From positions 181,226 through 245,225 of IMG/VR virus record IMGVR_UViG_3300047095_000752: a stretch of 64,000 nucleotides of DNA. One strand, given 5' to 3'. Each line of letters opens with the position of its first letter. The stretch's first letter is position 1. The notes beneath the pieces are model-generated. The model ran no database searches, was not told the origin of the DNA, and saw only the letters and a program-made list of their open reading frames with translations. The translations under genes were made by a program, and so were the position numbers. Below are positions 1 to 64,000 of the stretch, piece after piece.

Positions 1-160
1 CAATGGCGTTTAGATCTGCCTTTAAACTCGATATATAAGATTCTACAGTTAAATTAAATGCATATGGAGTTTCAGTCTTAGATTCAATAAGTCGATCTAG
101 AGTCGAGGGCTGGTTTATTATTGGCTTAGGGTTTTTATTTATTACTATCGTGGTTGACAT
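1..160 (-). CDS. hypothetical protein, runs off the left edge (MSTTIVINKNPKP...)
   Basis: ATG at 160 overlaps the stop of the 145..615 ORF; frame open to position 1. Confidence 0.45.
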   Translation of the reverse strand, partial: MSTTIVINKNPKPIINQPSTLDRLIESKTETPYAFNLTVESYISSLKADLNAI

Positions 161-615
161 TGTTTAGACTTTTTAGTTTTCATATCATAAAAAATATTTA
201 AGCACTTTATTAAGTTGTCATACATATCAGTATAAACATGTGGTATCTCATATGCCATCCCGGATGTAATACCCTTTTCTTTAGTTATGATATGTCCGTA
301 TTCACCATATCTTAAATCTATATAATGATATTTATTATTATTTTTATTTTCTCTAAAAATTTTATTTAATAATTTGATATTTTCATTTTCGGCGGATTTA
401 TGTAAATAAAAAACAATTGGACAACAATGAAAATCTTCGGGATCGTTATAGTCATAATTTCGGCAAGATAATATAAATCTGGGAAATTTTTTATTAAATT
501 TATCTAAATCTTTTATAATATTTTCTAAGATTCTTTTATTTTCAGATAACTCTTTTATTTCATCTTCGAATTCTTGTATTACATCTATTATTTCTTTAAT
601 GGACTTACTTGGCAT
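145..615 (-). CDS. hypothetical protein
   Basis: 156-aa ORF, coupled to neighbours. Confidence 0.6.
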   Translation of the reverse strand: MPSKSIKEIIDVIQEFEDEIKELSENKRILENIIKDLDKFNKKFPRFILSCRNYDYNDPEDFHCCPIVFYLHKSAENENIKLLNKIFRENKNNNKYHYIDLRYGEYGHIITKEKGITSGMAYEIPHVYTDMYDNLIKCLNIFYDMKTKKSKQCQPR

Positions 616-856
616 ATATTAGTTCTTTCGGTTTTCCGTGAATACAACCAAAATCTGGACCTGTCTTAAAATGTGCGCTATATCCATCCGAATCACAATA
701 CATCAACGAATCTGGTTTAGATTCTTCGATGTTTGGATCATATAGGAATTTATCACCATCTAATAAACAATCGTAATAATAATCCGATCTATATCCTTCT
801 AGGTGGCTGTTATCATCATCGGAATACCAATATTTACATTCTTTACAAGTTATCAT
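605..856 (-). CDS. small Cys-containing hypothetical protein (CKECKYW...FGC)
   Basis: ATG at 856 follows AAAGGA and lies downstream of the terminator at 876-908. Confidence 0.6.
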   Translation of the reverse strand: MITCKECKYWYSDDDNSHLEGYRSDYYYDCLLDGDKFLYDPNIEESKPDSLMYCDSDGYSAHFKTGPDFGCIHGKPKELIYAK

Positions 857-875
857 TTTAACATCCTTTCTAAGT

Positions 876-9110: not shown

Positions 9111-9917
9111 ATGTCAATTTTCAAAAAAATTATACTTAGTTTAGGTGTTACATTATGTAGTTTAAATTCATATGCAATTACAGTTGATGGAAACTGGGAC
9201 GATTGGTTTTCATATTCAGGTAACATTGGTTTTAACACATGGCGTGAAAATCTAGTAACAGTTAACAACCCCAACATTCGTTTTCAAAACGATGAAGAAG
9301 GACCCACACCCGGTGGTGGTGGTCAGTTATATGATATAGAGCAAATCTTCTATGCATTTTCAGATAATGATCCCAACGCTATAAGTGGTGGTAAACTTTA
9401 TATTGGACTTGTAACGGGATTTCCACCACAAGGTGTTCCCGCAGATGCTCTATATGCTGGTGATCTTTTCATTGACATCGGTGCTACTGGTAGTTATACA
9501 TTTGCTATTAACTTAAGTGAACGACAAGCCGACGCTTCTCGCTTCAATCAAGGTTGGATCAATGTTAACTGGGATACAATAGACACAACATTTTATCCAG
9601 CAGCAAACCCATATCGAGTTGATGAAAATGGACCCGGTGTATTCAATTATACAACTTCATTAAACCCCGTTGTAGAAACCAATCTACACGGAAAGCATTA
9701 TTTTTATGAAATTTCAATCGACCTAGACAGCATCATGGAAGAACAGTTAACAAATCCAAATGGTGGTATCGGTCTACATTGGACTATGGAGTGTGGTAAC
9801 GACGTTATCGATGTCGTGGATAACACCCCTTTAAATCCAGTGCCCGAACCTAGTACAATCGCTCTGCTAACAATGGGTTGTATTGGGGCTGCATTTCGTC
9901 GTAAATTCAGCGCATAA
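9111..9917 (+). CDS. PEP-CTERM (exosortase-sorted) surface protein
   Basis: signal peptide MSIFKKIILSLGVTLCSLNSYA; C-terminal VPEPST + hydrophobic helix + RRK. Confidence 0.92.
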   Translation: MSIFKKIILSLGVTLCSLNSYAITVDGNWDDWFSYSGNIGFNTWRENLVTVNNPNIRFQNDEEGPTPGGGGQLYDIEQIFYAFSDNDPNAISGGKLYIGLVTGFPPQGVPADALYAGDLFIDIGATGSYTFAINLSERQADASRFNQGWINVNWDTIDTTFYPAANPYRVDENGPGVFNYTTSLNPVVETNLHGKHYFYEISIDLDSIMEEQLTNPNGGIGLHWTMECGNDVIDVVDNTPLNPVPEPSTIALLTMGCIGAAFRRKFSA

Positions 9918-17775: not shown

Positions 17776-17812
17776 GAACGCCAGACCATATAAATTGGTT
17801 TGGCGTTCTTTT
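17776..17812 (+). terminator. intrinsic terminator
   Basis: GAACGCCAGACCA/TGGTTTGGCGTTC followed by T-run. Confidence 0.7.
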
Positions 17813-17893
17813 TATCGGTATCGTTTGCATATATCCTTCATGTATGGTACACTTCATATACAATACTCACCACAACACAACGGGACCCAACCA

Positions 17894-18748
17894 ATGAGTT
17901 TTTTTCGTTACCCCGGCGGCAAGTCGAAGCTAAGAACCAAAATTGTATCTAAATTAAATGATATGGCTGGAGACTTAGATTTGGAGTACCGGGAACCTTT
18001 CTTTGGGGGTGGTAGTATAGGACTACAATACCTAGAAAAATCAAAAAATAATAAAGTGTGGATTAATGATTTAGACTTGGGTATTTATTGTCTATGGGTG
18101 TCAGTGTTTAGATATCCAGAGAAACTTAAAGAGAATGTTTTAAAATTTACTCCAACCGTAGATGCATTTTACTCATTCAAAAACGATTTAACTAGAGACT
18201 GTAAATTAATTGATATTGATACTGTTGTAAATTTTGGATTCAAAAAACTAGCGATACATCAAATATCATACTCTGGATTGGGTACAAAATCAGGTGGACC
18301 ATTAGGTGGGCAATCCCAACTTTCAGATTATAAGATTGACTGCCGATGGTCACCTAAATATATTTGTAAAAAAATAGATAAACTTAATAAACAGTTTAAA
18401 AGATATAGTTTAAGATTTTCAGGAGTAGATTTTTCCGAAGTTATACTGGAAGATACTAAGGATGCTATTATTTATCTAGATCCACCATATTTTGTAAAGG
18501 GCAATGATTTATATCAGCACGGATTCAACACTGAAGATCATATACGCCTAGCAAATTGTTTAAAGAATACAAAACATAAATGGTTATTGTCGTATGATGA
18601 TTGTGATGAAATACGAGATTTATATAGCTGGGCAACCATAGAAGAACTTGATGGTGTGAGTTATAGTATAACAGCACTTAAAGATAAAGACTCGGGTAAA
18701 AGAACTAGCAGACAAAAAACCGAATTATTAATATCGGCGGGTTATTAA
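17894..18748 (+). CDS. DNA adenine methyltransferase (Dam/D12 class)
   Basis: RYPGGKS, EPFFGGGS, IND, YLDPPY, WLLSYDD; likely start ATG 17894. Confidence 0.9.
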   Translation: MSFFRYPGGKSKLRTKIVSKLNDMAGDLDLEYREPFFGGGSIGLQYLEKSKNNKVWINDLDLGIYCLWVSVFRYPEKLKENVLKFTPTVDAFYSFKNDLTRDCKLIDIDTVVNFGFKKLAIHQISYSGLGTKSGGPLGGQSQLSDYKIDCRWSPKYICKKIDKLNKQFKRYSLRFSGVDFSEVILEDTKDAIIYLDPPYFVKGNDLYQHGFNTEDHIRLANCLKNTKHKWLLSYDDCDEIRDLYSWATIEELDGVSYSITALKDKDSGKRTSRQKTELLISAGY

Positions 18749-18749
18749 A

Positions 18750-19424
18750 ATGGATTTGTTAGAACAAATAAAAACAGAAGTTTTGATATATGATTGTACA
18801 TTTAAATTAGCAGAAGAGACACATAAAAAATCTTTGGATAAAATTATTTGTTTTTCTAATGCAATGAATTCAAAAGGTCAATCTAAAATACACTATGAAA
18901 ATGAACGAAATGCTGTAAATGCATTAAACAATATTAGAGTCGGTAAATATGGTGAATTAGCAGTTGCTGTATTTTTATATAAAAATGGATATCCAAAAAT
19001 AGTACCTGATATGACGGTTAGATATGGTGCGAGTAAAGGGTGGGATTGTGATCTACCATATAAAGAATTAGACCCCACTCTCCCGGATATACATGTAAAA
19101 ACATGCGACGTAAATACAACTAAGTATTTAAAATCAAATGGCAGGACAGACAATTATTCTTGGACATTTCAATTTGGTAATAAATCAGGCAAGGGTGGTA
19201 AAGATATTCTATTTACAACTCCGGATAGCACCGAAGTTATTTTTTTGTCTGTAGTATCAAATATAAATAACCCTAACGTTACAGTTTACGCTTCTGGTCC
19301 TTGGTGTAAGTTATATCCGATATTAAAAGATCCAATGTTAGATTATTTAATAGGATTTAAAAAATGTATATATTCAAATGATTTATTAGATATTGCTAAG
19401 ACTGTTAAATTAGAAATAAATTAA
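18750..19424 (+). CDS. putative PD-(D/E)XK nuclease coupled to the MTase
   Basis: GKYGE helix...PD...WDCDL...IHVKT; starts 1 nt after the MTase stop. Confidence 0.5.
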   Translation: MDLLEQIKTEVLIYDCTFKLAEETHKKSLDKIICFSNAMNSKGQSKIHYENERNAVNALNNIRVGKYGELAVAVFLYKNGYPKIVPDMTVRYGASKGWDCDLPYKELDPTLPDIHVKTCDVNTTKYLKSNGRTDNYSWTFQFGNKSGKGGKDILFTTPDSTEVIFLSVVSNINNPNVTVYASGPWCKLYPILKDPMLDYLIGFKKCIYSNDLLDIAKTVKLEIN

Positions 19425-19426
19425 AC

Positions 19427-19469
19427 AAAAAATCACCGTCCCTTAAATATTGGAGGCGGTGATTTTTTT
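19427..19469. terminator. bidirectional intrinsic terminator
   Basis: AAAAAATCACCGTC/GGCGGTGATTTTTTT between convergent genes. Confidence 0.75.
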
Positions 19470-19475
19470 GGGACA

Positions 19476-19772
19476 TCAAGTACATCCGACCCCCTGCGCC
19501 GGGATCTTATGGTCACCCGCCCGTAGGGTCGACCACCGCCCCTCTCCCTCCGGCCACTTCCATTCGCAGAACCCCGCCACCAACTCGAAGATGGATCCGT
19601 CTTCGAACTTGGCGGAAACATCACCCTTGTTTCCGCCACTCTCCACGAATTGTTTACAGTCTCCTTTTATGGAGGTAACCCGCTGATTAAACTCCGGGTT
19701 GGAGTTGAACTTCGTCTCAACTAATTTCATAGCCAAGACGTAGTCCCTTCCGAATGTTGATGATGTCCACAT
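19476..19772 (-). CDS. GC-rich orphan protein
   Basis: AAAGGG RBS, class A promoter upstream, terminator downstream. Confidence 0.65.
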   Translation of the reverse strand: MWTSSTFGRDYVLAMKLVETKFNSNPEFNQRVTSIKGDCKQFVESGGNKGDVSAKFEDGSIFELVAGFCEWKWPEGEGRWSTLRAGDHKIPAQGVGCT

Positions 19773-19842
19773 GTTATATCCCTTTTATGTGAAACTTTGA
19801 TATCCCCATCAAGTCACACAGAAGTTATGGGAATATAATTTA

Positions 19843-19862
19843 CAATTATTAATATATATAAT
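19843..19862 (-). promoter_or_regulatory. phage promoter class A
   Basis: ATTATATATAT TAATAAT TG. Confidence 0.7.
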
Positions 19863-19866
19863 TAAA

Positions 19867-20199
19867 TTAAAATACACAATTATGAATTCTATCCGCTTTT
19901 ACTTTATCCCCGACGATGTAGTAAAAGTTTTTTTGCTTTAACGCATTCGCGAATTTGTGTAGGCAGATGTGAACGGCACCTTCAATCCGTATCCCGGAAT
20001 TGAGATCTACTCGGGTACCGTCATTTAATTTCATGACCATCTTATCATCCGTCTTATCACGTAATGTTACTGTATATCCGTTGGACGAATCAAGCTCAAT
20101 ATTGGACCCGTACACCCATATGATCTCCCCTATCGAAGGAAGTATTTTTCCACCGATGGTGATATCACGCCCCGTAACATTAACTAACATTGGTACCAT
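19867..20199 (-). CDS. hypothetical protein
   Basis: AAGGAGG RBS before ATG 20199. Confidence 0.6.
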   Translation of the reverse strand: MVPMLVNVTGRDITIGGKILPSIGEIIWVYGSNIELDSSNGYTVTLRDKTDDKMVMKLNDGTRVDLNSGIRIEGAVHICLHKFANALKQKNFYYIVGDKVKADRIHNCVF

Positions 20200-20211
20200 A
20201 AAACCTCCTTG

Positions 20212-20250
20212 AAAAAGAAAAACCGGCGCTCCCCACAATGAGGAGCGCCG
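20212..20250 (-). terminator. intrinsic terminator
   Basis: CGGCGCTCC/GGAGCGCCG stem followed by T-run on the minus strand. Confidence 0.75.
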
Positions 20251-20256
20251 AACCTG

Positions 20257-20340
20257 TTACGCGAAGAAGTCGTTGCCATTCGACTTCTTCTTGAAGAGTT
20301 TGTTGAAAATATTAATGATATAATCAATTACCCCAGCCAT
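20257..20340 (-). CDS. 27-aa amphipathic peptide MAGVIDYIINIFNKLFKKKSNGNDFFA
   Basis: own class A promoter, AAAGGG RBS and terminator; below the ORF-track cutoff. Confidence 0.65.
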   Translation of the reverse strand: MAGVIDYIINIFNKLFKKKSNGNDFFA

Positions 20341-20395
20341 ACCGTTACCCTTTCGATGTTTAATGTTGTATTATAGAATATACATACTCTATCTT

Positions 20396-20415
20396 CGTTA
20401 GTTTATATATATAAT
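20396..20415 (-). promoter_or_regulatory. phage promoter class A
   Basis: ATTATATATAT AAACTAA CG. Confidence 0.65.
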
Positions 20416-20861
20416 CACTGTACAGTGGATGGTAGTTGCAATAATTGAGTCCCTCGTTGCCAAGAACTCTCCAATAACATAGGTCTATTCACTTTTGATG
20501 AATCGACACGAGATGTCGCTAATACCCAGCTTGCCGCCATTATCCCACTTCCCGATGATATGTTTATATATACTTTGCTTTTTCGGTGCATATGAATTAG
20601 TTGTTCACTTGCCATATAAATGGATTCCATATCATTAGGATGATCTATGATAACTTTTTTTGCTCGTATATATAATTTTGGGTGTTTAGCTCTTAGATTA
20701 TGAACAAACCCACCACTTCCTAATACCCGCTTGTATCGTATAGAATCATATAATATAAACAACTGATCTATTTCTATATCCCGCAGGATATCACATATCG
20801 CCCCTCGTTTCGTGTTTTCCTCAAGATCGGTAGTACCAACCCAACTCAATAAGACACTCAC
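20415..20861 (-). CDS. stand-alone CARF-domain protein (RtcR/PspF-type N-terminal domain)
   Basis: LLSWVGTTDL...P.D..SIY...INISSGS..MAASWVL...LLESS..RG pattern of CARF domains of sigma54 activators; no AAA+ or HTH. Confidence 0.7.
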   Translation of the reverse strand: MSVLLSWVGTTDLEENTKRGAICDILRDIEIDQLFILYDSIRYKRVLGSGGFVHNLRAKHPKLYIRAKKVIIDHPNDMESIYMASEQLIHMHRKSKVYINISSGSGIMAASWVLATSRVDSSKVNRPMLLESSWQRGTQLLQLPSTVQ

Positions 20862-20874
20862 ATAAACACTCCTT

Positions 20875-21300
20875 CTAAGTTTCGTTCAAAGGGTTATACA
20901 CAACACACGTGATTAAAGATTGTAAACAATAAGTATTATCAAAATCCGGATCCCTATATACAAATACGACATTGTTAAAACACATGAGATATAAATAATA
21001 CTTCGATAATCCGAATTCAACATAAAAACTACGATATACAGACATGTTATAAACAGATCCATAATAACGAAAGTTGTAATATTTTTTCTGTTTATTATTT
21101 AAATATTGTTTATTATGTGTTGTCTTAGTATGATGTGTTATATGTATATCCTTTGGTATGATATTTCGAAGATCCGATGTTTTACTATCTATGAAATAAG
21201 GTAAAACGAGTCTATAATCTTTTTTCAAAATTTTAAATATTAGTTCCATACATCGGATAATTATATTATCATAGGTGTCCGACAGATTTAATTTGTACAC
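20875..21300 (-). CDS. orphan protein (array member)
   Basis: 141 aa; CMELIFKILKKDYR N-terminal motif shared with other array genes. Confidence 0.5.
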   Translation of the reverse strand: MYKLNLSDTYDNIIIRCMELIFKILKKDYRLVLPYFIDSKTSDLRNIIPKDIHITHHTKTTHNKQYLNNKQKKYYNFRYYGSVYNMSVYRSFYVEFGLSKYYLYLMCFNNVVFVYRDPDFDNTYCLQSLITCVVYNPLNET

Positions 21301-21326
21301 ACGAAGCCCTCAAGTTAAATACCATA

Positions 21327-21725
21327 TCATAGACGATACTCAAATATATATTCTCCGAAATACGTCCCGGTTAAATCATAGTCCTCAAGTCTAACCAAAA
21401 AACTTAACAATACGAAATTTGTTTTAAAAGTAAATGCGGTCAATGTAGTAATTCCATCACAGTCGTATATTATGGTATCACTTAATATCACCGCATTCTT
21501 GTTGAATGTATAATTATGTTTAGGCTTATATTTCAAATCTGGTATATACAATTCCATTTCTTCACCATTTGGATAGGAGTCATATAAACCAATTAGTCTG
21601 TTGTTTACACTTTGGCTTGACCACAATTTCATGTAATTGAATATAGGGAATATTTTAACATTTAAGTTAGACACAAGAACATGGGTATAATATATACACT
21701 GTTGAATTCTATGTTGTATATCCAT
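21327..21725 (-). CDS. orphan paralogue (PIFN...KxNF family)
   Basis: FPIFNY...KTNFVLL. Confidence 0.55.
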   Translation of the reverse strand: MDIQHRIQQCIYYTHVLVSNLNVKIFPIFNYMKLWSSQSVNNRLIGLYDSYPNGEEMELYIPDLKYKPKHNYTFNKNAVILSDTIIYDCDGITTLTAFTFKTNFVLLSFLVRLEDYDLTGTYFGEYIFEYRL

Positions 21726-22114
21726 TATACGGGGAGTACCGAACTTCTAAATGGCAGTCTGTTATAATTAGATGATGGACATGCATATCTAGATGTTAGA
21801 ATTAAAAAATTGTACTTTGGAACTCTTAGAACTAATACGGTCGAGTCGTGTACACTAGATTTGGAGAACCCGCGACACACACTCAATTTAAATGTGTGAT
21901 CCGAATTAACTAATGGATAAGGAAAGTGAATGTCGATCCCATAGAAATTGAATTTTACTTTATCACTTTGTTTGGAATCTATACATATTATATCATGCAT
22001 CATAAAATTAAATATAGGAAATCGACATATTTTTAGGTCGTAGATCAATCTTAAAATTAAAGCCAAACTATTAGTTAACTTAGATTTATATACAAGACTT
22101 GGTCCCACCATCAC
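21725..22114 (-). CDS. orphan paralogue (PIFN...KxNF family)
   Basis: FPIFNF...KYNFLIL. Confidence 0.55.
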   Translation of the reverse strand: MMVGPSLVYKSKLTNSLALILRLIYDLKICRFPIFNFMMHDIICIDSKQSDKVKFNFYGIDIHFPYPLVNSDHTFKLSVCRGFSKSSVHDSTVLVLRVPKYNFLILTSRYACPSSNYNRLPFRSSVLPV

Positions 22115-22560
22115 ATCATCCTCCTTTTTTGCTTAACATTCATCATACTGTAGTTATATGGCCAGGTATCTCTATGGTATTCAGAATCCTCGTTGGACCC
22201 GTCTGTTACCCTTTTTAATAACATAAAATTATATTTACTGGTGAATAAGGATAGGGATACATCACAACATTTATCTCTTATTGGCGCAAACACATTCCTG
22301 AATATAATATTTGGGGAACCAACTGATATTTTAAAATTAGACATATAAAGAGACTCAGCAGACGACCTTCGTATTGGCGTAGTTTTGGTATAATTAGTTT
22401 GAAAGTTATTATAATCCCATGCTTTAACAAAATTAAATATAGGTATAATTGTAATATGTAACCCAAAGTCTATGAGCTTAAACAATTTATTTACTATACT
22501 ATATTGCATTCCTTTAATATAATGTATATACTTATATGAATTTTGATTCCATGGGTACAA
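22111..22560 (-). CDS. orphan paralogue (PIFN...KxNF family)
   Basis: IPIFNF...KYNFMLL. Confidence 0.55.
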   Translation of the reverse strand: MYPWNQNSYKYIHYIKGMQYSIVNKLFKLIDFGLHITIIPIFNFVKAWDYNNFQTNYTKTTPIRRSSAESLYMSNFKISVGSPNIIFRNVFAPIRDKCCDVSLSLFTSKYNFMLLKRVTDGSNEDSEYHRDTWPYNYSMMNVKQKRRMM

Positions 22561-22617
22561 GCTCTAACCTCCACTCGTCATAATTAACCGCAGAAAAATA
22601 AAACAGAAGTATAACTC

Positions 22618-22637
22618 CAATAATAAATATATATAGT
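22618..22637 (-). promoter_or_regulatory. phage promoter class A
   Basis: ACTATATATAT TTATTAT TG; heads the paralogue/CARF operon. Confidence 0.7.
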
Positions 22638-22650
22638 TAAATAAACGTCG

Positions 22651-22663
22651 GGACAAATGTGTA
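22651..22663 (+). promoter_or_regulatory. phage promoter class B (GGACAAAT)
   Basis: GGACAAATGTGTA upstream of the 22686 gene. Confidence 0.6.
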
Positions 22664-22685
22664 TATACTTAAAAGGAGATTTTAT

Positions 22686-22892
22686 ATGATTACTCATAAA
22701 GACATACACGTAGTTTTAGAATCATTTGTCAAAGAAACTACGCAAAAAAATAATGCCGTAAAGACCGAAGATAATTTTATGTTAGAGTCTAACTTACTTG
22801 AGTACGGTAGTGAAACCTATGATTTTGCTGGAAATATTAAAGTTGCTGACGAAGCTGCCTATATGGATTTCATCATCGAAAATAACCACTAA
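22686..22892 (+). CDS. small acidic protein with LxE motifs
   Basis: AAGGAG RBS, ATG 22686. Confidence 0.6.
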   Translation: MITHKDIHVVLESFVKETTQKNNAVKTEDNFMLESNLLEYGSETYDFAGNIKVADEAAYMDFIIENNH

Positions 22893-22972
22893 ATCCTAGT
22901 TTCGACTTTCTTTTTACCTCACTAGATGGTATACTGTAGTAACAACAGTTTCCAATTTAGTGAGGTTTTTTC

Positions 22973-24169
22973 ATGTCTAATAATCTTAAACCGATAATGT
23001 TCTGCACACAACCATGTATGGAGATATTCGATTATATAAATCCAAATACCATTGACACGATACATCTATATATAGATTTAAAAAATTCATCGACCAACTT
23101 ATTTATACCAGATGTAGTACAAGAAATAGTAGAGACAAGTCGCCGAATGGGTAAGTCAGTTGAAAGTTCTATTTTTCAATCTATTATATTGACTTGCTCG
23201 AACTGGATAAGTGCTGCTCGAAGCCGTGGGTTTAATTGTAAGATAATCATATGCAATGATAAAGGCAGGTCCGAATACCATACAAAACTAAATCCATTAT
23301 ATAAAAAGAATAGAAAAATCACAAATGTATTGATGGAACATTATAGTGAAGAAATGGATCAGATTAAGACCCGCAACTGGGATTTCGCTGAGAAGATATG
23401 TGCAAAATTAAATAATATACATTTTATTAATATTAATTTCTTAGAAAGTGATTTTTTACCTTATTATTTAATAACTCGATATTTCAACGAATCGCCAAAT
23501 GTATATCATATCGTATCATCATGTGATAAGGATCACTTTCAATTATTAAATAAACCCAATACAATAATGTTCTCACGCAAATCAGGCACTACAACCATAT
23601 TAGATAAACAATCGTATTTAAGTAAATTTTTAAAGATTAATAAAGCCAGCGTTAAATCACAATCCAAATGGATCGATATAATGTCTAAAGTAAATCCAGA
23701 ATATATTGTATTAATAATGGCTATGTGCGGGGACGTATCCGATAACGTATTTGGTATACCTAGAATTGGTGATAAAACTGCATTAAAAATGATATCAGAT
23801 CATGATGTTGTAAACGAACTAATTGGTACGGTGGATGAACTTGAAGATAGATTATATAATGGTGGAAAAGTAATTCTAGATAAGCCTGATTTATATGATA
23901 GTTTAGATAATAATTGGAAATTAGCTGTAGATAATAATGACTTACTCACCAAAGCATATAAACAAATAAGCTACGAATCGCTATCAAGATGGCTTGATAA
24001 AACTGACATGATTAATGTTAAAGTTCCTGCTCGTAAAGCGATTGATGATAATATTAATAAACCATTCTATGTTTATAACGAAACTCACAAAGAAAATTTT
24101 ATCAAAAAAATAAAAGAATTAATACACGACTTTCACTTGAACGATTCTGATATTTACAATTTATTTTAA
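22973..24169 (+). CDS. 5'-3' exonuclease / T4 RNase H-like (FEN family)
   Basis: YID, YKKNR, ESD, SCDKD, GDVSDNVFGIPRIGDKTA (H3TH). Confidence 0.85.
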   Translation: MSNNLKPIMFCTQPCMEIFDYINPNTIDTIHLYIDLKNSSTNLFIPDVVQEIVETSRRMGKSVESSIFQSIILTCSNWISAARSRGFNCKIIICNDKGRSEYHTKLNPLYKKNRKITNVLMEHYSEEMDQIKTRNWDFAEKICAKLNNIHFININFLESDFLPYYLITRYFNESPNVYHIVSSCDKDHFQLLNKPNTIMFSRKSGTTTILDKQSYLSKFLKINKASVKSQSKWIDIMSKVNPEYIVLIMAMCGDVSDNVFGIPRIGDKTALKMISDHDVVNELIGTVDELEDRLYNGGKVILDKPDLYDSLDNNWKLAVDNNDLLTKAYKQISYESLSRWLDKTDMINVKVPARKAIDDNINKPFYVYNETHKENFIKKIKELIHDFHLNDSDIYNLF

Positions 24170-24172
24170 TCT

Positions 24173-24218
24173 AAAAAACACGCTACCGGGATATCTGCCG
24201 GTAGCGTGTTCTTTTTTA
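24173..24218. terminator. bidirectional intrinsic terminator
   Basis: AACACGCTACCGG/CCGGTAGCGTGTT flanked by A- and T-runs. Confidence 0.8.
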
Positions 24219-24222
24219 GTTC

Positions 24223-24633: not shown

Positions 24634-24663
24634 GATTTTACTCTCCTTCCAAGAGGTATTATA

Positions 24664-35415: not shown

Positions 35416-35450
35416 ATAAATTTAGAAGTAACCGTTCGAAAGCGAGTTTT

Positions 35451-44782: not shown

Positions 44783-47101
44783 ATGCAAATTGTAAAGACT
44801 ATGCAATTGACAAATCAGTGGGTTGTTGTGATAATCAACTCCATGCAGGATGTGGTTAATGAAATTGGTAGATTATCGGGTAGTTCAACATACCTGAATA
44901 ATGTTAATCTATGGGCAAGTACTAGATATACAGCGACACCAAACTACAATGCCCGTAACGCCTTCCGTACCGTCAGAGACCAATACATTGCCCAAGCCCG
45001 TATCAATGTAGGTGAACAAGCATTAGACGACGCCACATCATTCACACCAAATCCCCTAGAACAAGGCCGGGTACTCGTTGGAATCAATGAGGATATTACA
45101 ACTGGCGGCCCTCTTGTCGAATACGTACATTACTGTTACTTGAAGGTACCACTTGATACAACTTCAATCTCCGTATTCGGACAAACAACCTCCGTAATCC
45201 TGAATGATGACCAAATCTCCAGAGCAATCAAGATAAATCAGGTAGGCTATCTGCCCTCATCACCAAAGAAGTATGCCTATATAGGAGCGCACATTTATGA
45301 TCACGGTCCGCTTACCATCGATGCGACAAGTTTTACTATTCATGATAGTAGCTCAAACGCAACTGTGTATACCGGATCGGTCACACTAAGAGATTCAAAT
45401 ACAATTCTTGCAAGTGGAAAACCATTGACGGGTGAAAACGTCTATCAGATGGACCTCTCGGATTTTTCAGGTATTGGTGAATTTTACATTAAAGTTCCCG
45501 GCGTGGGAAGATCTTGGAATTTCAAACACACACTCGATGTTTATGGGGAAGTATTCTACACTACAACCCGTGGTCTTTATCATCAACGTTGTGGATTACC
45601 TCTAAAAGCTCCTTATACTAATTGGCTACGCCCAACCTGCCATACGAAACCAGTCAAGGAATCTAAATTCGTTTCGTTCCCAAGTCAATTTACAGATCGT
45701 CCCGCTAACTATGAACGGTTTGATGTTTACGGTGCGACCACAGATCATAGCTCATTCAACGTGACCGCAGCGGGCGGCTGGCATGACGCGGCAGACTGGG
45801 ATCGTAATACTCAGCACTACACTTGTGTTTTTGATCTTCTTTACGCTTATGAAATGGATCCTGATAAATTCACTTCAAATCAATTAAATATCCCGGAATC
45901 ACCAACCGCTTACCCAGATATATTGAAAGAGGCGGAATACGGTTTACAGTGTTGGAAGAGATCTATGGACTCGCGGGGCGGAGTTTCCGGGATGATCGAG
46001 ACGAATACGCATCCGACACGCGGAGTTGACGGCAATTACGCATACTCGGTTAGAACTCGCTGGGATTCACTACTATTAGCCGCCGCAGCAGCCATGATGG
46101 CGGAATTAATCGCGCCATTTGACATGGCTAAATCGAATACTTGGAAATGGTATGCTATTAAAAGTTATAACTTCGGAAACAATCCCGCTAATAGCTTAGG
46201 AACTGTGACAATCCCCGCGAAGACGAACCGAGGACTTGGTACATCTTACACCTATACCTTCACGGAAAAAGACACGCATATTGAACCGCTCCTTGCTCAC
46301 GCTAAATCCAGATTGTATAAGTTAACAAGCGATTCCACCTATCTAACTGGACTTGATACTTTAATTGGAAAATTAAGAGCACCATTTAAATGGCCATATA
46401 CAAATCGTGATTACAGCGGATGGATTAACTATAGTTGTCTCGATCACGTGTCAAATCCAACTACCAAAGCTAATTATATTAAACTTTGGTTTACAAATTA
46501 TGCTGATGCGTTACTACCCCACGTTGCAGCCCAGCCTTATAGATGTACTTGGCCAGTTACAAAAGACTTCTGGTTGGATTGGGGAGCGAGTTGCATGACC
46601 AATGAGAACAGATCCCTGCTACTTTCATACAAACTCACGACTCAATCCAAGTATTTAGAAGCTGCAATTTTAAACATGGACTATATGCTCGGCGCAAATC
46701 CACAGGGTATGGTATACACAACTGGTTTAGGGCAGTCGTATCCTGCAATTTTACAGCACGAAACGAGTCAGTTTGATGGCATCGATGATCCAGTACCCGG
46801 AATTGCCTTGTACGGTCAAACCGGCGGCTCACACAACACACTACGCACAACAGTCTGGCAATCCCCTTCTCCGACGGGACAGGTGGAATTCAAGACGCCC
46901 GTTGTTCCTTTATGGAGATCTTGGTCCGCTCACCCAACCTTAAATACAAGACAGTGTGAATTTACGATCCAAGAAACAATGTCCTGCAATATCTTCTCGG
47001 CTGCAGCCTTAATGTCGGAGGGGTGGAGTCCTTCAAATACACTTAAAACCAAGACTCCAAAGACACTGGCGAATTTACCCGGATATTATTACTTACCGTA
47101 A
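44783..47101 (+). CDS. glycoside hydrolase family 9 with Ig-like CelD_N domain
   Basis: INQVGYLP, LYHQRCG, GGWHDAAD, DYMLGANPQGMVYTTGLG, CEFTI catalytic Glu. Confidence 0.88.
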   Translation: MQIVKTMQLTNQWVVVIINSMQDVVNEIGRLSGSSTYLNNVNLWASTRYTATPNYNARNAFRTVRDQYIAQARINVGEQALDDATSFTPNPLEQGRVLVGINEDITTGGPLVEYVHYCYLKVPLDTTSISVFGQTTSVILNDDQISRAIKINQVGYLPSSPKKYAYIGAHIYDHGPLTIDATSFTIHDSSSNATVYTGSVTLRDSNTILASGKPLTGENVYQMDLSDFSGIGEFYIKVPGVGRSWNFKHTLDVYGEVFYTTTRGLYHQRCGLPLKAPYTNWLRPTCHTKPVKESKFVSFPSQFTDRPANYERFDVYGATTDHSSFNVTAAGGWHDAADWDRNTQHYTCVFDLLYAYEMDPDKFTSNQLNIPESPTAYPDILKEAEYGLQCWKRSMDSRGGVSGMIETNTHPTRGVDGNYAYSVRTRWDSLLLAAAAAMMAELIAPFDMAKSNTWKWYAIKSYNFGNNPANSLGTVTIPAKTNRGLGTSYTYTFTEKDTHIEPLLAHAKSRLYKLTSDSTYLTGLDTLIGKLRAPFKWPYTNRDYSGWINYSCLDHVSNPTTKANYIKLWFTNYADALLPHVAAQPYRCTWPVTKDFWLDWGASCMTNENRSLLLSYKLTTQSKYLEAAILNMDYMLGANPQGMVYTTGLGQSYPAILQHETSQFDGIDDPVPGIALYGQTGGSHNTLRTTVWQSPSPTGQVEFKTPVVPLWRSWSAHPTLNTRQCEFTIQETMSCNIFSAAALMSEGWSPSNTLKTKTPKTLANLPGYYYLP

Positions 47102-60481: not shown

Positions 60482-61134
60482 TGAGCGTCATTCCGATTCA
60501 AGATACGTATTTATCACCTTTTTGTGATGATAGTCCAGAAGGACTTGGTCAATGGATTTCAGTTTATAATCTATTTGTTAGAAGAGGTAATTACACTTAT
60601 GTCGGACAAAACTCTATTAGATTTAGTACATTAGACCACCTGTCCGCTCCATTACCTAATGTAAGTGCCAGAGTTTATGATAATTCCGGATACGATTTCG
60701 AAATGACAGCATCAACAGCGTCCACCGTTACACTTAGAGGTGGGATTGTTGTAGTAAATAATACTGTTATTGAACTTGAAGGATTTACTACAAACTTTAG
60801 CGAACTAGCTGGACACTGGGCACCGGGTAACTTATATGGTACTTGGAATTTTTCAAACAATTCCACCGACTCAGCATTTATGTGTGTTTTATACGATCCA
60901 TATATGCCAGACGGAACCATAAACCCAACCGAACCCGGCGCTAGAATAGTATATGTAACGGTCGGTGATTTAGACTATAGTGTTATGGCTCCAATTTGGT
61001 TAATTAAAGTAACTAAAACAGGATCCACAGTTACAAATGTGCAGTTATTATTAGAAACTGTTGGTGTAACCCCAAAAGTAGAACAAATTGGCTATTGGAA
61101 AAATTTTATAGTAGATGGTGGAAATTTTGTATAA
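60481..61134 (+). CDS. probable structural protein ending VDGGNFV
   Basis: paralogue of previous gene. Confidence 0.6.
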   Translation: MSVIPIQDTYLSPFCDDSPEGLGQWISVYNLFVRRGNYTYVGQNSIRFSTLDHLSAPLPNVSARVYDNSGYDFEMTASTASTVTLRGGIVVVNNTVIELEGFTTNFSELAGHWAPGNLYGTWNFSNNSTDSAFMCVLYDPYMPDGTINPTEPGARIVYVTVGDLDYSVMAPIWLIKVTKTGSTVTNVQLLLETVGVTPKVEQIGYWKNFIVDGGNFV

Positions 61135-61171
61135 GAATATTATATAATAAATAGGAGTTATAAATAACGAT

Positions 61172-64000
61172 ATGAGTAATACTACAATTAAATTAAAACG
61201 TACAGACTTCGCCGCCTCTATAGATGCTATAGTTCTACAACGCGGCGAACCTGCAATCGATTTTGATAGACAAATTCTATGGGTTGGTGATGGTGATGTG
61301 AATTTACAATTCGCCGCCGTTAATTCCGATGCCGCCTCTCATTCTGTTACATCAGCGGGTGAGTCTGGTGATGTACATACAGTAACAGTTACCAAATATG
61401 GTTCTGTTCTTAAAGGGACTGCTACAACCAAGGCTTCTTTCCAACGACTTGGATTCTACGATCTTGGTGATATTGCAGTTTTACCTTCAACCAATGCTTC
61501 CTTCCCTTCGCAAGATGTATCTGATACAACTGGTATATTAAGTCGTTGGCACTGGATTGAAAAGACGCATGCTGGTCCCCGTAGATCTTTATTTATGACC
61601 AATACCTCTATTAGCGGTGTTGGTACGGGATCTAATGGATCTGGTATGGGTAATATGCGTCACGCTGGTGGTGCTAGTGCCGCAGACCTAACTGGTTATC
61701 GGGTTGAAGCTCTGTCTTACGAATATGCCGGTGATATGTTAATGACAAATCCGGAATTTGATGGCGGCGGCTCTCACGTCCTTGTAGTAGATTATACAAG
61801 TAGCTTATCAAACAATGTATTAAAATTCCGTAGACTACTCGCTGCTGATATTGAAGGTGGATCTCCTGTACATGAAATGACATCGGATTCACACAGTTGT
61901 TCCGCATCACTGATATATTATTCTCGCGGGGTTAATGACATGACCTCTTTAAGTTTCTTAAGCGGTACTGTTGCCGGTAAAGTTATTAAAAGAGCTAGTT
62001 CAACAGCGCTTGAATGGAGTACTGTTGATTGGTCTGAAATTACAGGTAATTTTAATCCCGACCTTGGTTCCGTGGCTGCAAATAATAATACAATGCGATT
62101 TGATGCTACACTTAGTCGTTGGGTTATAAATCCGTATGTAAACAGTATTAACGACTCAGCCGCCGGTTGGAATGGTCACGAGATTATAAATACCGGGTTC
62201 ACAGGTAGAACGATTGGTACTACGTATAAAGCGTATTCCGGTTCAACAGTTATAAGTACGGTTGAAATGTGTTTACCCGGATCTACTAAAAAGGTCAATC
62301 AATATTATATCGGAAGTAATGACGGTGGGTTTGTATTTAATATTAAAGGTAACCACGACCAATTTCTATTTTATGCTGGTAACAATCCTGATGCTGGAGA
62401 TGTTCCGAACTTCTGGATTCGTAAAACAGGCGGGGTTAGAATTCAAGCGACAACTAGACATGACAATCTTTTTGCATTAACAAATTCCGGGACTCCAGCA
62501 AAATCAGCCGATCTTGAAATTGGTAGTAAAACCAACACCCGGCAAATTGTATTTGATTCCGCGTCTCGCCCATCATTACCCGAATACTCTGGTATATTAA
62601 TAAGTGAAACCAGTATTAGACAAGACCACGCCACCGCCGTAGCAACTGCCGAGGTTGCAGGTCTGAGAATAGATAATATAACATACACATCCGGAAGCGG
62701 CGCTCCAGACTACACAAATCCATGCCAACCTACATATATGCTCCGACTTGGAAATGTATCATCAACCAATACAACAATTGGTGCACGATTTGGCAGTGTA
62801 ACTGTAACCGAACGTGTAATAGATCCAACAATTACAGGTAGAACTGCGTGTGGTCTATATTTCGATAGTATTCGTAATGCTAGAGACGAGACTGGTAGTA
62901 ATGCGTTTGGGATTCGGTTTGATCAAATTGTTGCAGGTTATGGGAGCACCACTGCCGGTGGGTCCGCTTATGGGGTTAACATTGGTGGTGTTTCTGGGTT
63001 CATTGACGCATATGGTTTCAATTTCAGTACATCTATTACAGGTAAGCGAAATGCATATGGTATTAATATCAATGCCATATCAAATGACACCGGGGTCGCC
63101 CCATCAACTACAGCATCAAATACAATCGGTCTAAACATTGGTTCTATTAGAAATGGTGCTAATGTTGCTGGTATTTCAATTACCGATATAACTTCGGGCG
63201 ATACTACTAAAAAGACAGTTGGATTATTTATAAATCTTGGTGCAAATACTAGTTTACAGTCTACTTCTGTAGCGACCAACGATCCCCATGTAATTTATGC
63301 TATAGGTGGTAAAACGTATTTAGGTGGAGCGACAACACTAGGATGGACCGGCGTCGGAACTACCCTAACTGTATTAGGGCAAACCGTACTACAATCATCA
63401 TTGGCAGTTTGGACTAGTGTAACTATATCACAAGCCCTAGCAGTCGGTAACAGTAGTATACCGGATACAAACTACGTATCTAATTTTTATGGTGATGTTA
63501 AAATTAGACGAATCGGAGCACAAGGGGTTGGGCGTCGACTCTCAATTGACGGTAACGGGACGGATGAAGTGTTCGGCGGCGGTCAATTAATATCATCCGT
63601 AATTTCTATTGAGCGGGGTCATATTGATGTAACATCTGGTGACTTGAGGTTATATAGTGGTATTGTTCGGGATAATACGTTTGATAGTACCATTTTAGAT
63701 CAAGGTACCAGTACCGACGAGTACTTAAAAGCTGGTAATGGCACTGTAATCGATGTATCTAAATATCGTACCTTAATATTAACTACTTCAACCGCAGGAT
63801 CTCCTGTCGGGAACACTCCACATTCTATATGGAGAATAAAGCCCGGATATAATGGGCAAAGATTAACATTAGTTGCTAGAATTGCTGCTACATCCGCCAC
63901 CAAACGATATATAGAATTACAGGGCGCTGATACAGACAATATAAACGACTCAAATAGACAATCGAATATAGTCATTGAGAAGAGTGATTATTTTGACGAT
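61172..64000 (+). CDS. fibre/spike-like protein with Mtd_N-type N-terminus, runs off the right edge
   Basis: MSNTTIKLKR...LQRGEPAIDFD..ILWVGDG; Gly/Ser/Thr-rich beta-repeat region; same frame open at the window end and no stop reported by the ORF track. Confidence 0.8.
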   Translation, partial: MSNTTIKLKRTDFAASIDAIVLQRGEPAIDFDRQILWVGDGDVNLQFAAVNSDAASHSVTSAGESGDVHTVTVTKYGSVLKGTATTKASFQRLGFYDLGDIAVLPSTNASFPSQDVSDTTGILSRWHWIEKTHAGPRRSLFMTNTSISGVGTGSNGSGMGNMRHAGGASAADLTGYRVEALSYEYAGDMLMTNPEFDGGGSHVLVVDYTSSLSNNVLKFRRLLAADIEGGSPVHEMTSDSHSCSASLIYYSRGVNDMTSLSFLSGTVAGKVIKRASSTALEWSTVDWSEITGNFNPDLGSVAANNNTMRFDATLSRWVINPYVNSINDSAAGWNGHEIINTGFTGRTIGTTYKAYSGSTVISTVEMCLPGSTKKVNQYYIGSNDGGFVFNIKGNHDQFLFYAGNNPDAGDVPNFWIRKTGGVRIQATTRHDNLFALTNSGTPAKSADLEIGSKTNTRQIVFDSASRPSLPEYSGILISETSIRQDHATAVATAEVAGLRIDNITYTSGSGAPDYTNPCQPTYMLRLGNVSSTNTTIGARFGSVTVTERVIDPTITGRTACGLYFDSIRNARDETGSNAFGIRFDQIVAGYGSTTAGGSAYGVNIGGVSGFIDAYGFNFSTSITGKRNAYGININAISNDTGVAPSTTASNTIGLNIGSIRNGANVAGISITDITSGDTTKKTVGLFINLGANTSLQSTSVATNDPHVIYAIGGKTYLGGATTLGWTGVGTTLTVLGQTVLQSSLAVWTSVTISQALAVGNSSIPDTNYVSNFYGDVKIRRIGAQGVGRRLSIDGNGTDEVFGGGQLISSVISIERGHIDVTSGDLRLYSGIVRDNTFDSTILDQGTSTDEYLKAGNGTVIDVSKYRTLILTTSTAGSPVGNTPHSIWRIKPGYNGQRLTLVARIAATSATKRYIELQGADTDNINDSNRQSNIVIEKSDYFDD

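What the first reader, a model, noticed from the sequence alone, without database searches (positions are those of the whole stretch)
1..64000. Near-total avoidance of CCWGG
Seen: in an AT-rich genome Pro-Gly should mostly be CCA/CCT-GGN, yet the Pro-Gly junctions I checked are CCC-GGN or CCG-GGN (for example near 9310, 15370, 16051, 17911, 27838, 37307, 43681, 49085, 59330, 63842). By eye I found only one CCWGG (22162-22166, in an orphan array gene), while CCSGG is common; base composition alone would predict tens of sites. Inference: long-term selection by an EcoRII/Dcm-type CCWGG restriction system in the host, or by the phage's own nuclease.
Basis: seen in the sequence. Interest (0 to 1): 0.6.

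Follow-up and report, generated by a model that had tools for sequence, protein, structure and literature searches.

The report
Phage genome purged of restriction sites
An uncultured lake jumbo phage has almost no CCWGG, GGCC or SAGCTS sites, having swapped them for synonymous codons; this is a very clean but classical case of a virus dodging its host's restriction enzymes.

Summary
The window has 1 CCWGG against 82 CCSGG. The whole 245-kb phage contig has 4 CCWGG, where 200 synonymous-codon shuffles give 139±9 (z about -14). Of 121 Pro-Gly junctions, 120 use CCC or CCG, although 67% of other Pro codons are CCA or CCT.

CCWGG is not alone:
- GGCC: 38 observed, about 199 expected.
- SAGCTS: 3 observed, 93 expected.
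- GRGCYC: 2 observed, 42 expected.
- About ten GC-rich 6-bp palindromes are at 0-2 copies.
- GATC, GGWCC, CCWWGG and GAATTC are normal.

The pattern is specific to one lineage. Relatives with 92% and 65% portal identity also lack CCWGG. Kin at 35-42% portal identity do not.

The lost sites reappear mainly as CCSGG, with little gain in CTWGG/CCWAG. That indicates selection on synonymous codons and not 5mC deamination.

The held contig (78% complete) has no cytosine methyltransferase, only two Dam-family adenine methyltransferases.

Best explanation: long-term avoidance of several host Type II restriction sites. The enzyme family (EcoRII or another) and the host remain unknown.

The "own nuclease" idea is not supported. 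ORF 18750 belongs to a conserved adenine-methyltransferase/nuclease cassette, and another phage carrying that cassette has normal CCWGG.

This is a known kind of phenomenon, so interest is modest.

The parts
1..64000 (.). Window-wide depletion of CCWGG (1 site), GGCC (13 sites) and GC-rich 6-bp palindromes. It is part of a depletion across the whole 245-kb contig.
22162..22166 (-). The only CCWGG in the window. It reads ACC-TGG (Thr-Trp) in the minus-strand ORF 22111-22560 and could be removed synonymously. It overlaps a GGCC at 22160 that belongs to a Trp-Pro pair (TGG-CCA), which cannot be removed synonymously.
   Evidence: Identical in contigs of two other lake runs.
9309..9313 (+). Example of an in-frame Pro-Gly junction written CCC-GG. 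The other verified examples are at 15370, 16051, 17912, 27838, 37308, 43681, 49085, 59331 and 63842.
   Evidence: Genome-wide codon table.
17795..18748 (+). Dam-family (D12 class) N6-adenine DNA methyltransferase, one of two in the contig. The other is at genome 92188-92949 on the minus strand, outside the window.
   Evidence: Pfam PF02086 E = 1.9e-24; phrog_56; TIGR00571, below its cut-off; PDB 7m6b E = 8e-22.
18750..19424 (+). It has no family hit. The predicted fold most resembles PD-(D/E)XK nucleases. It always lies directly downstream of a D12 methyltransferase.
   Evidence: no family. AlphaFold2 pLDDT 87.7. Best fold matches I-Ssp6803I Z 7.8, NhoI 6.4, DpnI 6.0, PvuII 5.0. Conserved linkage.
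44783..47101 (+). GH9 endoglucanase gene carrying 4 of the contig's 38 residual GGCC sites (45065, 45107, 46392, 46551), two of them in Trp-Pro pairs. Its nearest cellular kin are GC-rich Hydrogenedentota and Planctomycetota, which hints at incomplete purging of an acquired gene.

Best explanation
The window belongs to an uncultured freshwater (lake water) jumbo phage with T4-type portal, prohead protease and gp23-type capsid genes. Its DNA has been purged, over a long evolutionary time, of the recognition words of several host Type II restriction endonucleases. CCWGG is nearly eliminated. GGCC is eliminated except mostly where the protein sequence forbids it. SAGCTS, GRGCYC, CGATCG, CTCGAG, ACGCGT, GACGTC, CCGCGG, GGCGCC, CCCGGG and GCCGGC are also nearly or fully gone.

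Mechanism (inferred): unmodified phage DNA entering a cell that makes such an enzyme is cut at every site. Any variant that has lost a site through a synonymous change therefore leaves more progeny. Repeated over many infections, this drives the count towards zero.

Shown here: the depletion, its synonymous nature, its restriction to one phage lineage, and the absence of a cytosine methyltransferase in the held contig.

Inferred: that the selective agent is a set of host restriction enzymes, and that the phage covers other sites such as GATC with its two adenine methyltransferases instead of avoiding them.
For: 1. Size and specificity.
- CCWGG 4 against 139 +/- 9; GGCC 38 against 199 +/- 11.5.
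- SAGCTS 3 against 93; GRGCYC 2 against 42; RGGCCY 0 against 35; CAGCTG 0 against 33; CGATCG 1 against 24.
- Look-alike words are normal: CCWWGG 104 against 106, GGWCC 202 against 192, WAGCTW 241 against 247, GATC 1063 against 931, GAATTC 142 against 115.
- Among the 5- and 6-mers tested (shuffle expectation of at least 12), the words below O/E 0.1 contain CCWGG, GGCC or SAGCTS, or are CGATCG.

2. Selection on synonymous sites.
- 120 of 121 Pro-Gly junctions use CCS.
- CCSGG is in excess by 83 (z = 7.5), while the deamination products CTWGG and CCWAG gain only about 30 (z = 2.1).
- All CCWGG positions are synonymously removable, and CCWGG is 97% gone.
- 12 of the 38 surviving GGCC are Trp-Pro pairs (TGG-CCN), which cannot be removed without changing the protein. 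These are all 12 Trp-Pro dipeptides in the proteome.

3. Lineage specificity and persistence.
- The 92%-portal relative has 0 against 18.3 and 0 against 16.3 in two 20-kb loci.
- The 65%-portal relative (GC 29%) has 0 against 10.8.
- Four kin at 35-42% portal identity have 69 against 49 pooled.
- 80 unrelated bacterial loci show no depletion.

4. Real specificities. The avoided words are real Type II specificities that co-occur in freshwater bacteria. SAGCTS (m4C), GGCC and CCDGG are methylated in Beggiatoa leptomitoformis. CCWGG, GGCC and GCCGGC systems are reported in Thioflexothrix psekupsii: CCWGG and GGCC as detected methylated motifs, GCCGGC predicted from the sequence only (PMC4675945, PMC5920184, PMC5578853).

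5. No cytosine protection found. There is no C5 or N4/N6 (PF00145, PF01555) methyltransferase in the contig. Two D12 adenine methyltransferases are present, and GATC is not avoided.

6. Precedent. Site avoidance is an established anti-restriction strategy, with near-complete elimination in about one tenth of phage genomes (PMC6286503).
Against: - The host is unknown, so no cognate restriction gene has been seen.
- The portal profile found no related contig in any GTDB species genome.
- The GH9 donors (Hydrogenedentota, Planctomycetota, Chlamydiota, 43-51% identity) do not avoid these words themselves.
- The contig is only about 78% complete, so a cytosine methyltransferase or a DNA-modification pathway could lie in the missing part.
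- Gene calls for the shuffle were a simple longest-ORF caller, although the Markov nulls agree with it.
- Sequence alone cannot separate cutting of unmethylated sites from avoidance of being methylated and then cut by a methylation-dependent (Type IV) enzyme.
Confidence: 0.85

Rival explanations
1. Self-avoidance of the phage's own nuclease. The phage makes a CCWGG-cutting (and perhaps GGCC- or SAGCTS-cutting) endonuclease to shred host DNA, and stays immune by lacking the sites instead of methylating them.
For: ORF 18750-19424 has a confident model whose best structural matches are PD-(D/E)XK restriction and homing endonucleases. The phage has no cytosine methyltransferase that could protect such sites.
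Against: - The fold matches are weak (Z at most 7.8, Foldseek E at least 0.06).
- The ORF is welded to a D12 adenine methyltransferase in all four contexts, as expected for a methylation-guarded, adenine-containing target.
- A phage with a 45%-identical copy of the cassette has normal CCWGG, 16 against 17.8.
- No EcoRII-C domain was found, though that search rang in no control genome either.
- At least three unrelated words plus many 6-mers are avoided. This would need several phage nucleases, and none is recognisable.
Confidence: 0.04
2. Mutational decay. Host or phage Dcm-type 5-methylation of CCWGG (and of GGCC), followed by deamination, erodes the sites without selection by a nuclease.
For: 5mC deamination is a known mutational hotspot. 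Small excesses of CTWGG+CCWAG (468 against 438) and of GGTC+GACC (1020 against 925) exist.
Against: - The displaced sites reappear mainly as CCSGG (+83). That is a W-to-S change at the unmethylated central base, not C-to-T.
- No C5 methyltransferase is present in the phage.
- A 97% loss maintained in lineages diverged to 65% portal identity needs purifying selection, not a bias.
- SAGCTS and the 6-mers show the same near-total loss.
Confidence: 0.02
3. Avoidance of methylation, not of cutting. Some hosts methylate CCWGG, GGCC and SAGCTS, and other hosts in the phage's range carry methylation-dependent (Type IV, McrBC/Mrr-like) nucleases. Lacking the sites keeps progeny DNA unmarked.
For: This predicts the same sequence pattern. 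Freshwater bacteria with many such methyltransferases exist.
Against: It needs alternation between two host types and is less parsimonious. The phage methylates its own adenines (two D12 enzymes), so it does not generally shun methylation. There is no direct evidence either way.
Confidence: 0.06
4. The depletion is a by-product of composition, codon usage, protein sequence, or copying of the host's oligonucleotide style, with no site-specific selection.
For: Mild deviations (O/E 0.5-0.9) exist for many words, such as CTAG, ACGT, AGGAA and poly-A.
Against: Nulls that keep dinucleotides, trinucleotides, codon usage and every protein sequence all predict 133-176 CCWGG. Neighbouring words are normal. 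Kin of similar GC and gene content are not depleted.
Confidence: 0.01

Closest known systems
Restriction-site avoidance in virulent dsDNA phages (surveyed by Rusinov et al. 2018, PMC6286503). From my own knowledge: Sharp 1986 and Rocha et al. 2001, the few EcoRII sites of T3 and T7, and the lack of GGCC in several Bacillus phages.
   Same: Short palindromic Type II words are strongly under-represented or eliminated. The effect is strongest in a non-temperate-looking dsDNA phage. Avoidance is achieved through synonymous codons. Several sites are avoided at once.
   Different: This is an uncultured lake jumbo phage with no known host, so the avoided set is a prediction of the host's enzymes and not a match to them. 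The set includes the rare degenerate word SAGCTS. The degree is extreme for a 245-kb genome: 4 CCWGG and 3 SAGCTS.
EcoRII (Type IIE, CCWGG) and its isoschizomers such as BstNI, MvaI and PspGI
   Same: The recognition word is the same. Type IIE enzymes need a second site as an allosteric effector (PMC4081073). The four surviving sites, at least 7 kb apart, would probably be poor substrates (inference).
   Different: Nothing here identifies the enzyme family. The phage shows only the word. No host gene was examined. Thioflexothrix methylates CCWGG as m4C, unlike the m5C of Dcm and EcoRII.
M.Ble402III, the SAGCTS-specific m4C Type II methyltransferase of Beggiatoa leptomitoformis (PMC4675945, PMC5920184)
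   Same: It has the same degenerate word, covering all four members (CAGCTG, GAGCTC, CAGCTC/GAGCTG), which the phage avoids at 3 against 93. The habitat is freshwater. The same organism also methylates GGCC, CC[A/G/T]GG and GATC.
   Different: Beggiatoa also methylates GGNCC, TCGA and others that the phage does not avoid (GGWCC 202 against 192; TCGA 899 against 918). The phage tolerates CCSGG. This is a lead to the kind of system, not a host assignment.
Phage-borne Dam-type methyltransferases as anti-restriction (T4 Dam, P1 Dam; own knowledge)
   Same: The phage carries two D12-class adenine methyltransferases, and GATC is not avoided.
   Different: One of them is fused in an operon with a nuclease-like ORF, so it looks like a mobile R-M-like cassette instead of a solitary protective methyltransferase. 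Its specificity is unknown.

Membership tests
Restriction-site avoidance (anti-restriction by loss of target words) | The word is significantly under-represented against nulls that keep composition, oligonucleotide content, codon usage and protein sequence | tested here: met
   CCWGG 4 against 133-176 (Markov) and 139 +/- 9 (synonymous shuffle, z = -14.4).
Restriction-site avoidance (anti-restriction by loss of target words) | The avoided words have the form of Type II recognition sites, and close non-target words are not avoided | tested here: met
   CCWGG, GGCC, SAGCTS, GRGCYC and ten 6-bp palindromes are depleted. CCWWGG, GGWCC, WAGCTW, CCSGG and GATC are normal or in excess. SAGCTS, CCWGG and GGCC are published Type II motifs.
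Restriction-site avoidance (anti-restriction by loss of target words) | The host encodes a restriction enzyme with the avoided specificity | not testable with these tools
   Host unknown. The portal profile found nothing in GTDB genomes. GH9 kin are only 43-51% identical and are not depleted.
Restriction-site avoidance (anti-restriction by loss of target words) | The phage does not protect the same sites by its own methylation or modification | tested here: met
   No PF00145 or PF01555 match in the contig. Caveat: the contig is about 78% complete, and hypermodification pathways were not searched.
Restriction-site avoidance (anti-restriction by loss of target words) | The pattern follows phage lineage or host, not general phage biology | tested here: met
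   The close clade is purged (0 against 29 pooled, plus 0 against 16). Distant kin are not (69 against 49).
EcoRII-type (Type IIE) enzyme as the selective agent | The recognition word is CCWGG | tested here: met
   Both CCAGG and CCTGG are purged, and CCSGG is not.
EcoRII-type (Type IIE) enzyme as the selective agent | EcoRII N-terminal effector and C-terminal catalytic domains in the host enzyme; cleavage needs two sites | not testable with these tools
   No host genome is available. An EcoRII-C search of the phage itself found nothing, but the controls did not ring either.
Dcm-type methylation with deamination decay | Lost sites are replaced by CTWGG/CCWAG; a C5 methyltransferase acts on the DNA | tested here: not met
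   CTWGG+CCWAG 468 against 438 (only +30), while CCSGG gains 83. No C5 methyltransferase in the phage.
Type II R-M-like cassette (methyltransferase plus PD-(D/E)XK nuclease) for ORFs 17795-19424 | Conserved adjacency of the methyltransferase and nuclease genes | tested here: met
   A D12 methyltransferase lies directly upstream in the window and in L092/L093, L094 and L095.
Type II R-M-like cassette (methyltransferase plus PD-(D/E)XK nuclease) for ORFs 17795-19424 | The nuclease has a PD-(D/E)XK fold with catalytic residues, and both genes share one sequence specificity | tested here: inconclusive
   The model is confident (pLDDT 87.7). The top matches are PD-(D/E)XK nucleases, but at Z 5-7.8 and Foldseek E at least 0.06. 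Invariant E69, D87, D101 and K117 fit the motif only loosely. Specificity is unknown.

The most novel reading that the evidence does not exclude
The phage, and not the host, makes the nucleases. In this reading it degrades host DNA with site-specific endonucleases for CCWGG, GGCC or SAGCTS, and is immune because its genome lacks those words. That would be a methylation-free self/non-self rule. The evidence does not exclude it. About 22% of the genome is missing, most ORFs have no family, and one nuclease-like ORF of unknown specificity is present.

A milder and much more likely novelty is that the avoided set (CCWGG + GGCC + SAGCTS + CGATCG ...) is a usable fingerprint for finding the unknown lake host. 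It would also imply an active SAGCTS-cutting enzyme, so far known to me only as a methyltransferase motif.
Probability: 0.05. Interest if true: 0.75.

Novelty: new member of a known kind. Interest (0 to 1): 0.35.

Why it matters
The finding gives an unusually clean, quantified case of multi-site restriction avoidance in a large uncultured freshwater phage.

Its practical value is as a fingerprint. The host or hosts should carry, or have long carried, restriction systems for CCWGG, GGCC and SAGCTS, and probably for CGATCG, GRGCYC and several 6-mers. Their DNA should be methylated at those words. This can be checked in long-read lake metagenomes and could assign a host to a whole clade of jumbo phages.

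It also suggests that a SAGCTS-specific restriction activity is a significant force in lakes. A second, different phage from the same kind of sample avoids GGCC and SAGCTS but not CCWGG. The closest relative tolerates CCCGGG and GRGCYC. So the fingerprints differ between strains and could map who infects whom.

It does not reveal a new mechanism.

Tried and rejected
- **Phage records.** Megablast of 20 kb against GenBank phages found nothing. Portal tblastn found only about 22% identity to the PBS1/AR9 group, so there is no named relative.
- **The search for related loci, portal.** No hit in viral contigs or in GTDB genome contigs.
- **The genome search 'relatives'.** The pattern CCWGG is too short for the genome search.
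- **Cluster names.** Ten portal and GH9 homologues gave no taxonomy.
- **Host through the GH9 gene.** The nearest cellular kin are only 43-51% identical (Hydrogenedentota, Planctomycetota, Chlamydiota). None of the 80 loci avoids CCWGG. This served as a negative control, not as a host lead.
- **tRNAs.** None in the window. Six elsewhere in the contig are uninformative for the host.
- **AvaI, NspBII and AcyI-type degenerate words.** CYCGRG, CMGCKG and GRCGYC are only mildly low (O/E 0.6-0.7). The zeros belong to the strict palindromes, not to those degenerate sites.
- **Beggiatoa as host.** Rejected as a claim, because GGNCC, TCGA, RGCGCY and others from its methylome are not avoided.
- **ORF 18750.** No hit in Pfam, PHROGs, NCBIfam or PDB sequences. 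The Foldseek PDB search found nothing at E of 0.001 or better.
- **Small minus-strand ORFs at 19.8-25.8 kb.** They are not detectable paralogues by BLASTP, so 'array gene' is not confirmed.
- **Population variants.** Four lake runs gave identical sequence over 19300-25200, so this offered no test of ongoing selection.
- **Not used.** The large representative-protein search, complex prediction and RNA tools, because nothing in the claim rested on them.

Full report
**What the window is.** The 64-kb window is the last 64 kb (181226-245225) of a single 245,225-bp contig with 34.8% GC. The database holds it as an IMG/VR virus record, linear, with a CheckV completeness of 78%. It encodes a T4-type portal (PF07230), an S77 prohead protease and a gp23-type capsid protein. 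It also encodes UvsX-like and DnaB-like proteins, a class II ribonucleotide reductase, a PIN-PhoH protein with a LAGLIDADG insert, and a GH9 endoglucanase. No GenBank phage is close: megablast found nothing, and the portal is about 22% identical to those of PBS1 and AR9. Nearly identical DNA occurs in contigs of 24 public runs, 23 labelled lake water and one freshwater metagenome. The object is therefore an uncultured freshwater jumbo phage.

**Checking the observation.**
- The window holds one CCWGG (CCAGG at 22162) and 82 CCSGG. Markov models of order 1 and of maximal order expect 53 and 39 CCWGG.
- The whole contig holds four CCWGG, at genome positions 32185, 39333, 153867 and 203387. Markov models expect 133-176.
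- I called 300 non-overlapping long ORFs (88% coding) and shuffled synonymous codons within each gene 200 times. This keeps every protein and each gene's codon usage. The shuffles gave 139.4 +/- 9.4 CCWGG, never fewer than 118 (z = -14.4).
- Genome-wide, the Pro codon before Gly is CCC 86 times, CCG 34, CCT once and CCA never. Before any other residue it is CCA 43% and CCT 24% of the time.
- The other two frames are purged too. NCC-TGG occurs twice, NNC-CAG-G never and NNC-CTG-G once.
- The surviving window site is not an assembly error. Contigs from two other runs cover it without a difference.

**CCWGG is not alone.** Under the same synonymous-shuffle null:

| Word | Observed | Expected |
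|---|---|---|
| GGCC | 38 | 199 |
| SAGCTS | 3 | 93 |
| GRGCYC | 2 | 42 |
| RGGCCY | 0 | 35 |
| CAGCTG | 0 | 33 |
| CGATCG | 1 | 24 |
| CTCGAG | 0 | 16 |
| GAGCTC | 1 | 16 |
| GACGTC | 2 | 16 |
| ACGCGT | 0 | 14 |
| CCGCGG | 0 | 13 |
| GGCGCC | 0 | 10 |
| CCCGGG | 0 | 10 |
| GCCGGC | 0 | 8 |

SAGCTS is avoided as a whole. The non-palindromic pair CAGCTC/GAGCTG occurs twice against 44 expected, which points to one degenerate specificity.

Words that differ by one feature are normal or in excess: CCWWGG 104 against 106, GGWCC 202 against 192, WAGCTW 241 against 247, GATC 1063 against 931, GAATTC 142 against 115, GGATCC 57 against 41, CTGCAG 43 against 36. Among the 5- and 6-mers tested (shuffle expectation of at least 12), those with O/E below 0.1 all contain one of the three main words or are CGATCG. 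Everything else deviates only mildly.

**How the sites were lost.**
- Relative to the shuffle, CCSGG is in excess by 83 (z = 7.5). The deamination products CTWGG and CCWAG gain about 30 (z = 2.1), and the other one-step neighbours are unchanged. The loss is therefore mainly a change of the central W to S at the third position of Pro codons. That is a synonymous escape, not C-to-T decay.
- Every reading frame of CCWGG can be rewritten synonymously, and CCWGG is 97% gone.
- GGCC cannot be rewritten when it spans Trp-Pro (TGG-CCN). Twelve of the 38 surviving GGCC are exactly such pairs, and these are all the Trp-Pro dipeptides in the called proteome.
- Trp-Pro itself is half as frequent as a within-protein residue shuffle predicts: 12 against 23.8, z = -2.5. 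The reverse pair Pro-Trp is 21 against 24. This is a weak hint that selection also reaches the protein level.

**Lineage test.** Portal homologues gave 11-22-kb stretches (most about 20 kb) of related phages from other metagenomes. Expectations below are order-1 Markov.

| Locus | Relation to this phage | CCWGG | GGCC | SAGCTS |
|---|---|---|---|---|
| L003 | 92% portal identity | 0 / 18.3 | 6 / 28 | 0 / 6.9 |
| L095 | second locus of the same contig | 0 / 16.3 | 2 / 26.5 | 0 / 4.2 |
| L004 | 65% portal identity, GC 29% | 0 / 10.8 | 2 / 13 | 0 / 5.3 |
| L006-L009 pooled | 35-42% portal identity | 69 / 49 | 51 / 67 | 23 / 28.5 |

At 65% portal identity, synonymous sites are saturated, so the shared absence must be actively maintained (inference). 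The closest relative does tolerate CCCGGG (6 in each of its two loci) and GRGCYC, both of which this phage avoids. The secondary targets therefore differ between strains. Eighty unrelated bacterial loci fetched for another purpose show no CCWGG depletion.

**The phage's own DNA enzymes.**
- The contig has no C5 methyltransferase (PF00145) and no PF01555 N4/N6 methyltransferase. An EcoRII-C search was negative, but that search rang in no control genome.
- It has two D12-class (Dam-family) adenine methyltransferases, at genome 92188-92949 and at window 17795-18748.
- Fourteen homologues were found by the search for homologous proteins. Their alignment with the window protein has invariant E69, D87, D101 and K117 and gives a confident model (pLDDT 87.7).
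- The best structural matches are PD-(D/E)XK nucleases: I-Ssp6803I Z 7.8, NhoI 6.4, DpnI 6.0, PvuII 5.0. These scores alone do not prove the fold.
- In all three other contigs examined, the homologue again lies directly behind a D12 methyltransferase, in otherwise different neighbourhoods. The pair therefore behaves as a mobile methyltransferase-nuclease cassette.
- One of those phages (L092) has normal CCWGG (16 against 17.8), although it avoids GGCC (4 against 27) and SAGCTS (4 against 11).

The cassette does not track CCWGG avoidance. An adenine methyltransferase partner also fits an adenine-containing target better than CCWGG. The own-nuclease reading is unsupported, though not strictly excluded.

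**Best explanation and its limits.** The data fit the classical picture of restriction-site avoidance. Rusinov et al. find it mostly for orthodox Type II sites in non-temperate dsDNA phages, with near-complete elimination in about a tenth of genomes (PMC6286503).

The avoided words are real specificities that co-occur in freshwater bacteria:
- Beggiatoa leptomitoformis methylates SAGCTS (m4C, M.Ble402III), GGCC, CC[A/G/T]GG and GATC (PMC4675945, PMC5920184).
- Thioflexothrix psekupsii methylates CCWGG (m4C), GGCC and GATC, and a GCCGGC (m5C) methyltransferase is predicted from its sequence (PMC5578853).

These organisms are leads to the kind of system, not host assignments. Several of their other motifs (GGNCC, TCGA, RGCGCY) are not avoided here.

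If the CCWGG enzyme were Type IIE like EcoRII, which needs a second site as effector (PMC4081073), the four survivors, at least 7 kb apart, would probably be poor substrates. That is inference.

What remains unshown:
- the host;
- any cognate restriction gene;
- the enzyme family;
- whether the missing 22% of the genome holds a cytosine methyltransferase or a modification pathway.

A Type IV scenario, in which the phage avoids being methylated, predicts the same sequence pattern and cannot be excluded.

**Host search.**
- The portal profile found nothing in 185,579 GTDB species genomes.
- The GH9 gene's nearest cellular relatives are Hydrogenedentota, Planctomycetota and Chlamydiota MAGs at 43-51% identity. 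That is too distant for a host call, and those genomes are not depleted.
- The GH9 gene carries 4 of the 38 residual GGCC. This is consistent with a GC-rich origin that is still being purged, but the statistics are weak.

**Verdict.** The own-nuclease alternative is not supported. The phenomenon is well known. The new elements are the organism, the extremeness for a 245-kb genome, the SAGCTS component, and the use of the avoided set as a testable host fingerprint.

Noticed in passing
whole contig; in the window, for example, no CAGCTG and no GAGCTC: SAGCTS (CAGCTG, GAGCTC, CAGCTC/GAGCTG) is almost absent, 3 against 93 expected. It is also absent in relatives L003, L004 and L095, and low in an unrelated lake phage (L092). 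In the paper library the motif appears as a methylation motif only as the m4C motif of M.Ble402III in Beggiatoa.
   Followed up: yes
window 17795-19424; L092 9106-10687; L094 9126-10678; L095 9129-10675: A conserved two-gene cassette: a D12 adenine methyltransferase directly followed by, or overlapping, a 220-230-aa ORF with no family. The ORF's model resembles PD-(D/E)XK nucleases. The cassette sits in different neighbourhoods in different lake phages and may be a mobile phage-borne R-M-like module of unknown specificity.
   Followed up: partly
window 44783-47101: A full-length GH9 endoglucanase (CelD_N + GH9) is conserved in this phage clade at 56-75% identity. Its nearest cellular kin are in Hydrogenedentota, Planctomycetota and Chlamydiota at 43-51%. 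It may be a depolymerase against a cellulose-containing host envelope or matrix. It carries 4 of the 38 residual GGCC sites.
   Followed up: partly
window 35400-37751: A PIN-PhoH fusion protein with a LAGLIDADG_3 domain in the middle (residues about 465-520), which looks like an intein or homing-endonuclease insertion. Portal homologues in distant kin (P0018, P0028, P0049) carry intein domains too.
   Followed up: no
L003 and L095 (contig of the 92%-portal relative): The closest relative has 6 CCCGGG in each of two 20-kb loci (1.3-1.6 expected) and normal GRGCYC, both of which this phage lacks completely. Strain-level differences in the secondary avoided sites suggest different host strains or different R-M repertoires.
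   Followed up: partly
whole contig: The flanks of GATC are skewed. RGATCY occurs 388 times against 260 expected (z = 11.5), TGATCA 41 against 68 and CGATCG 1 against 24. The excess of RGATCY is unexplained.
   Followed up: no
whole contig (genome 28099 ... 227776): Trp-Pro dipeptides are half as frequent as expected (12 against 23.8), and each carries an unavoidable GGCC. This may mean that selection against GGCC reaches the amino-acid level.
   Followed up: partly
genome 13572-16862 (outside the window): A cluster of six tRNA genes: Ile-TAT twice, Leu-TAA, Asn-GTT, Arg-TCT and one undetermined. All read A/T-ending codons.
   Followed up: no
L092 5859-7088: An IS605-type OrfB/TnpB (Cas12f-like) gene inside a lake phage contig, 2 kb upstream of the methyltransferase-nuclease cassette.
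   Followed up: no
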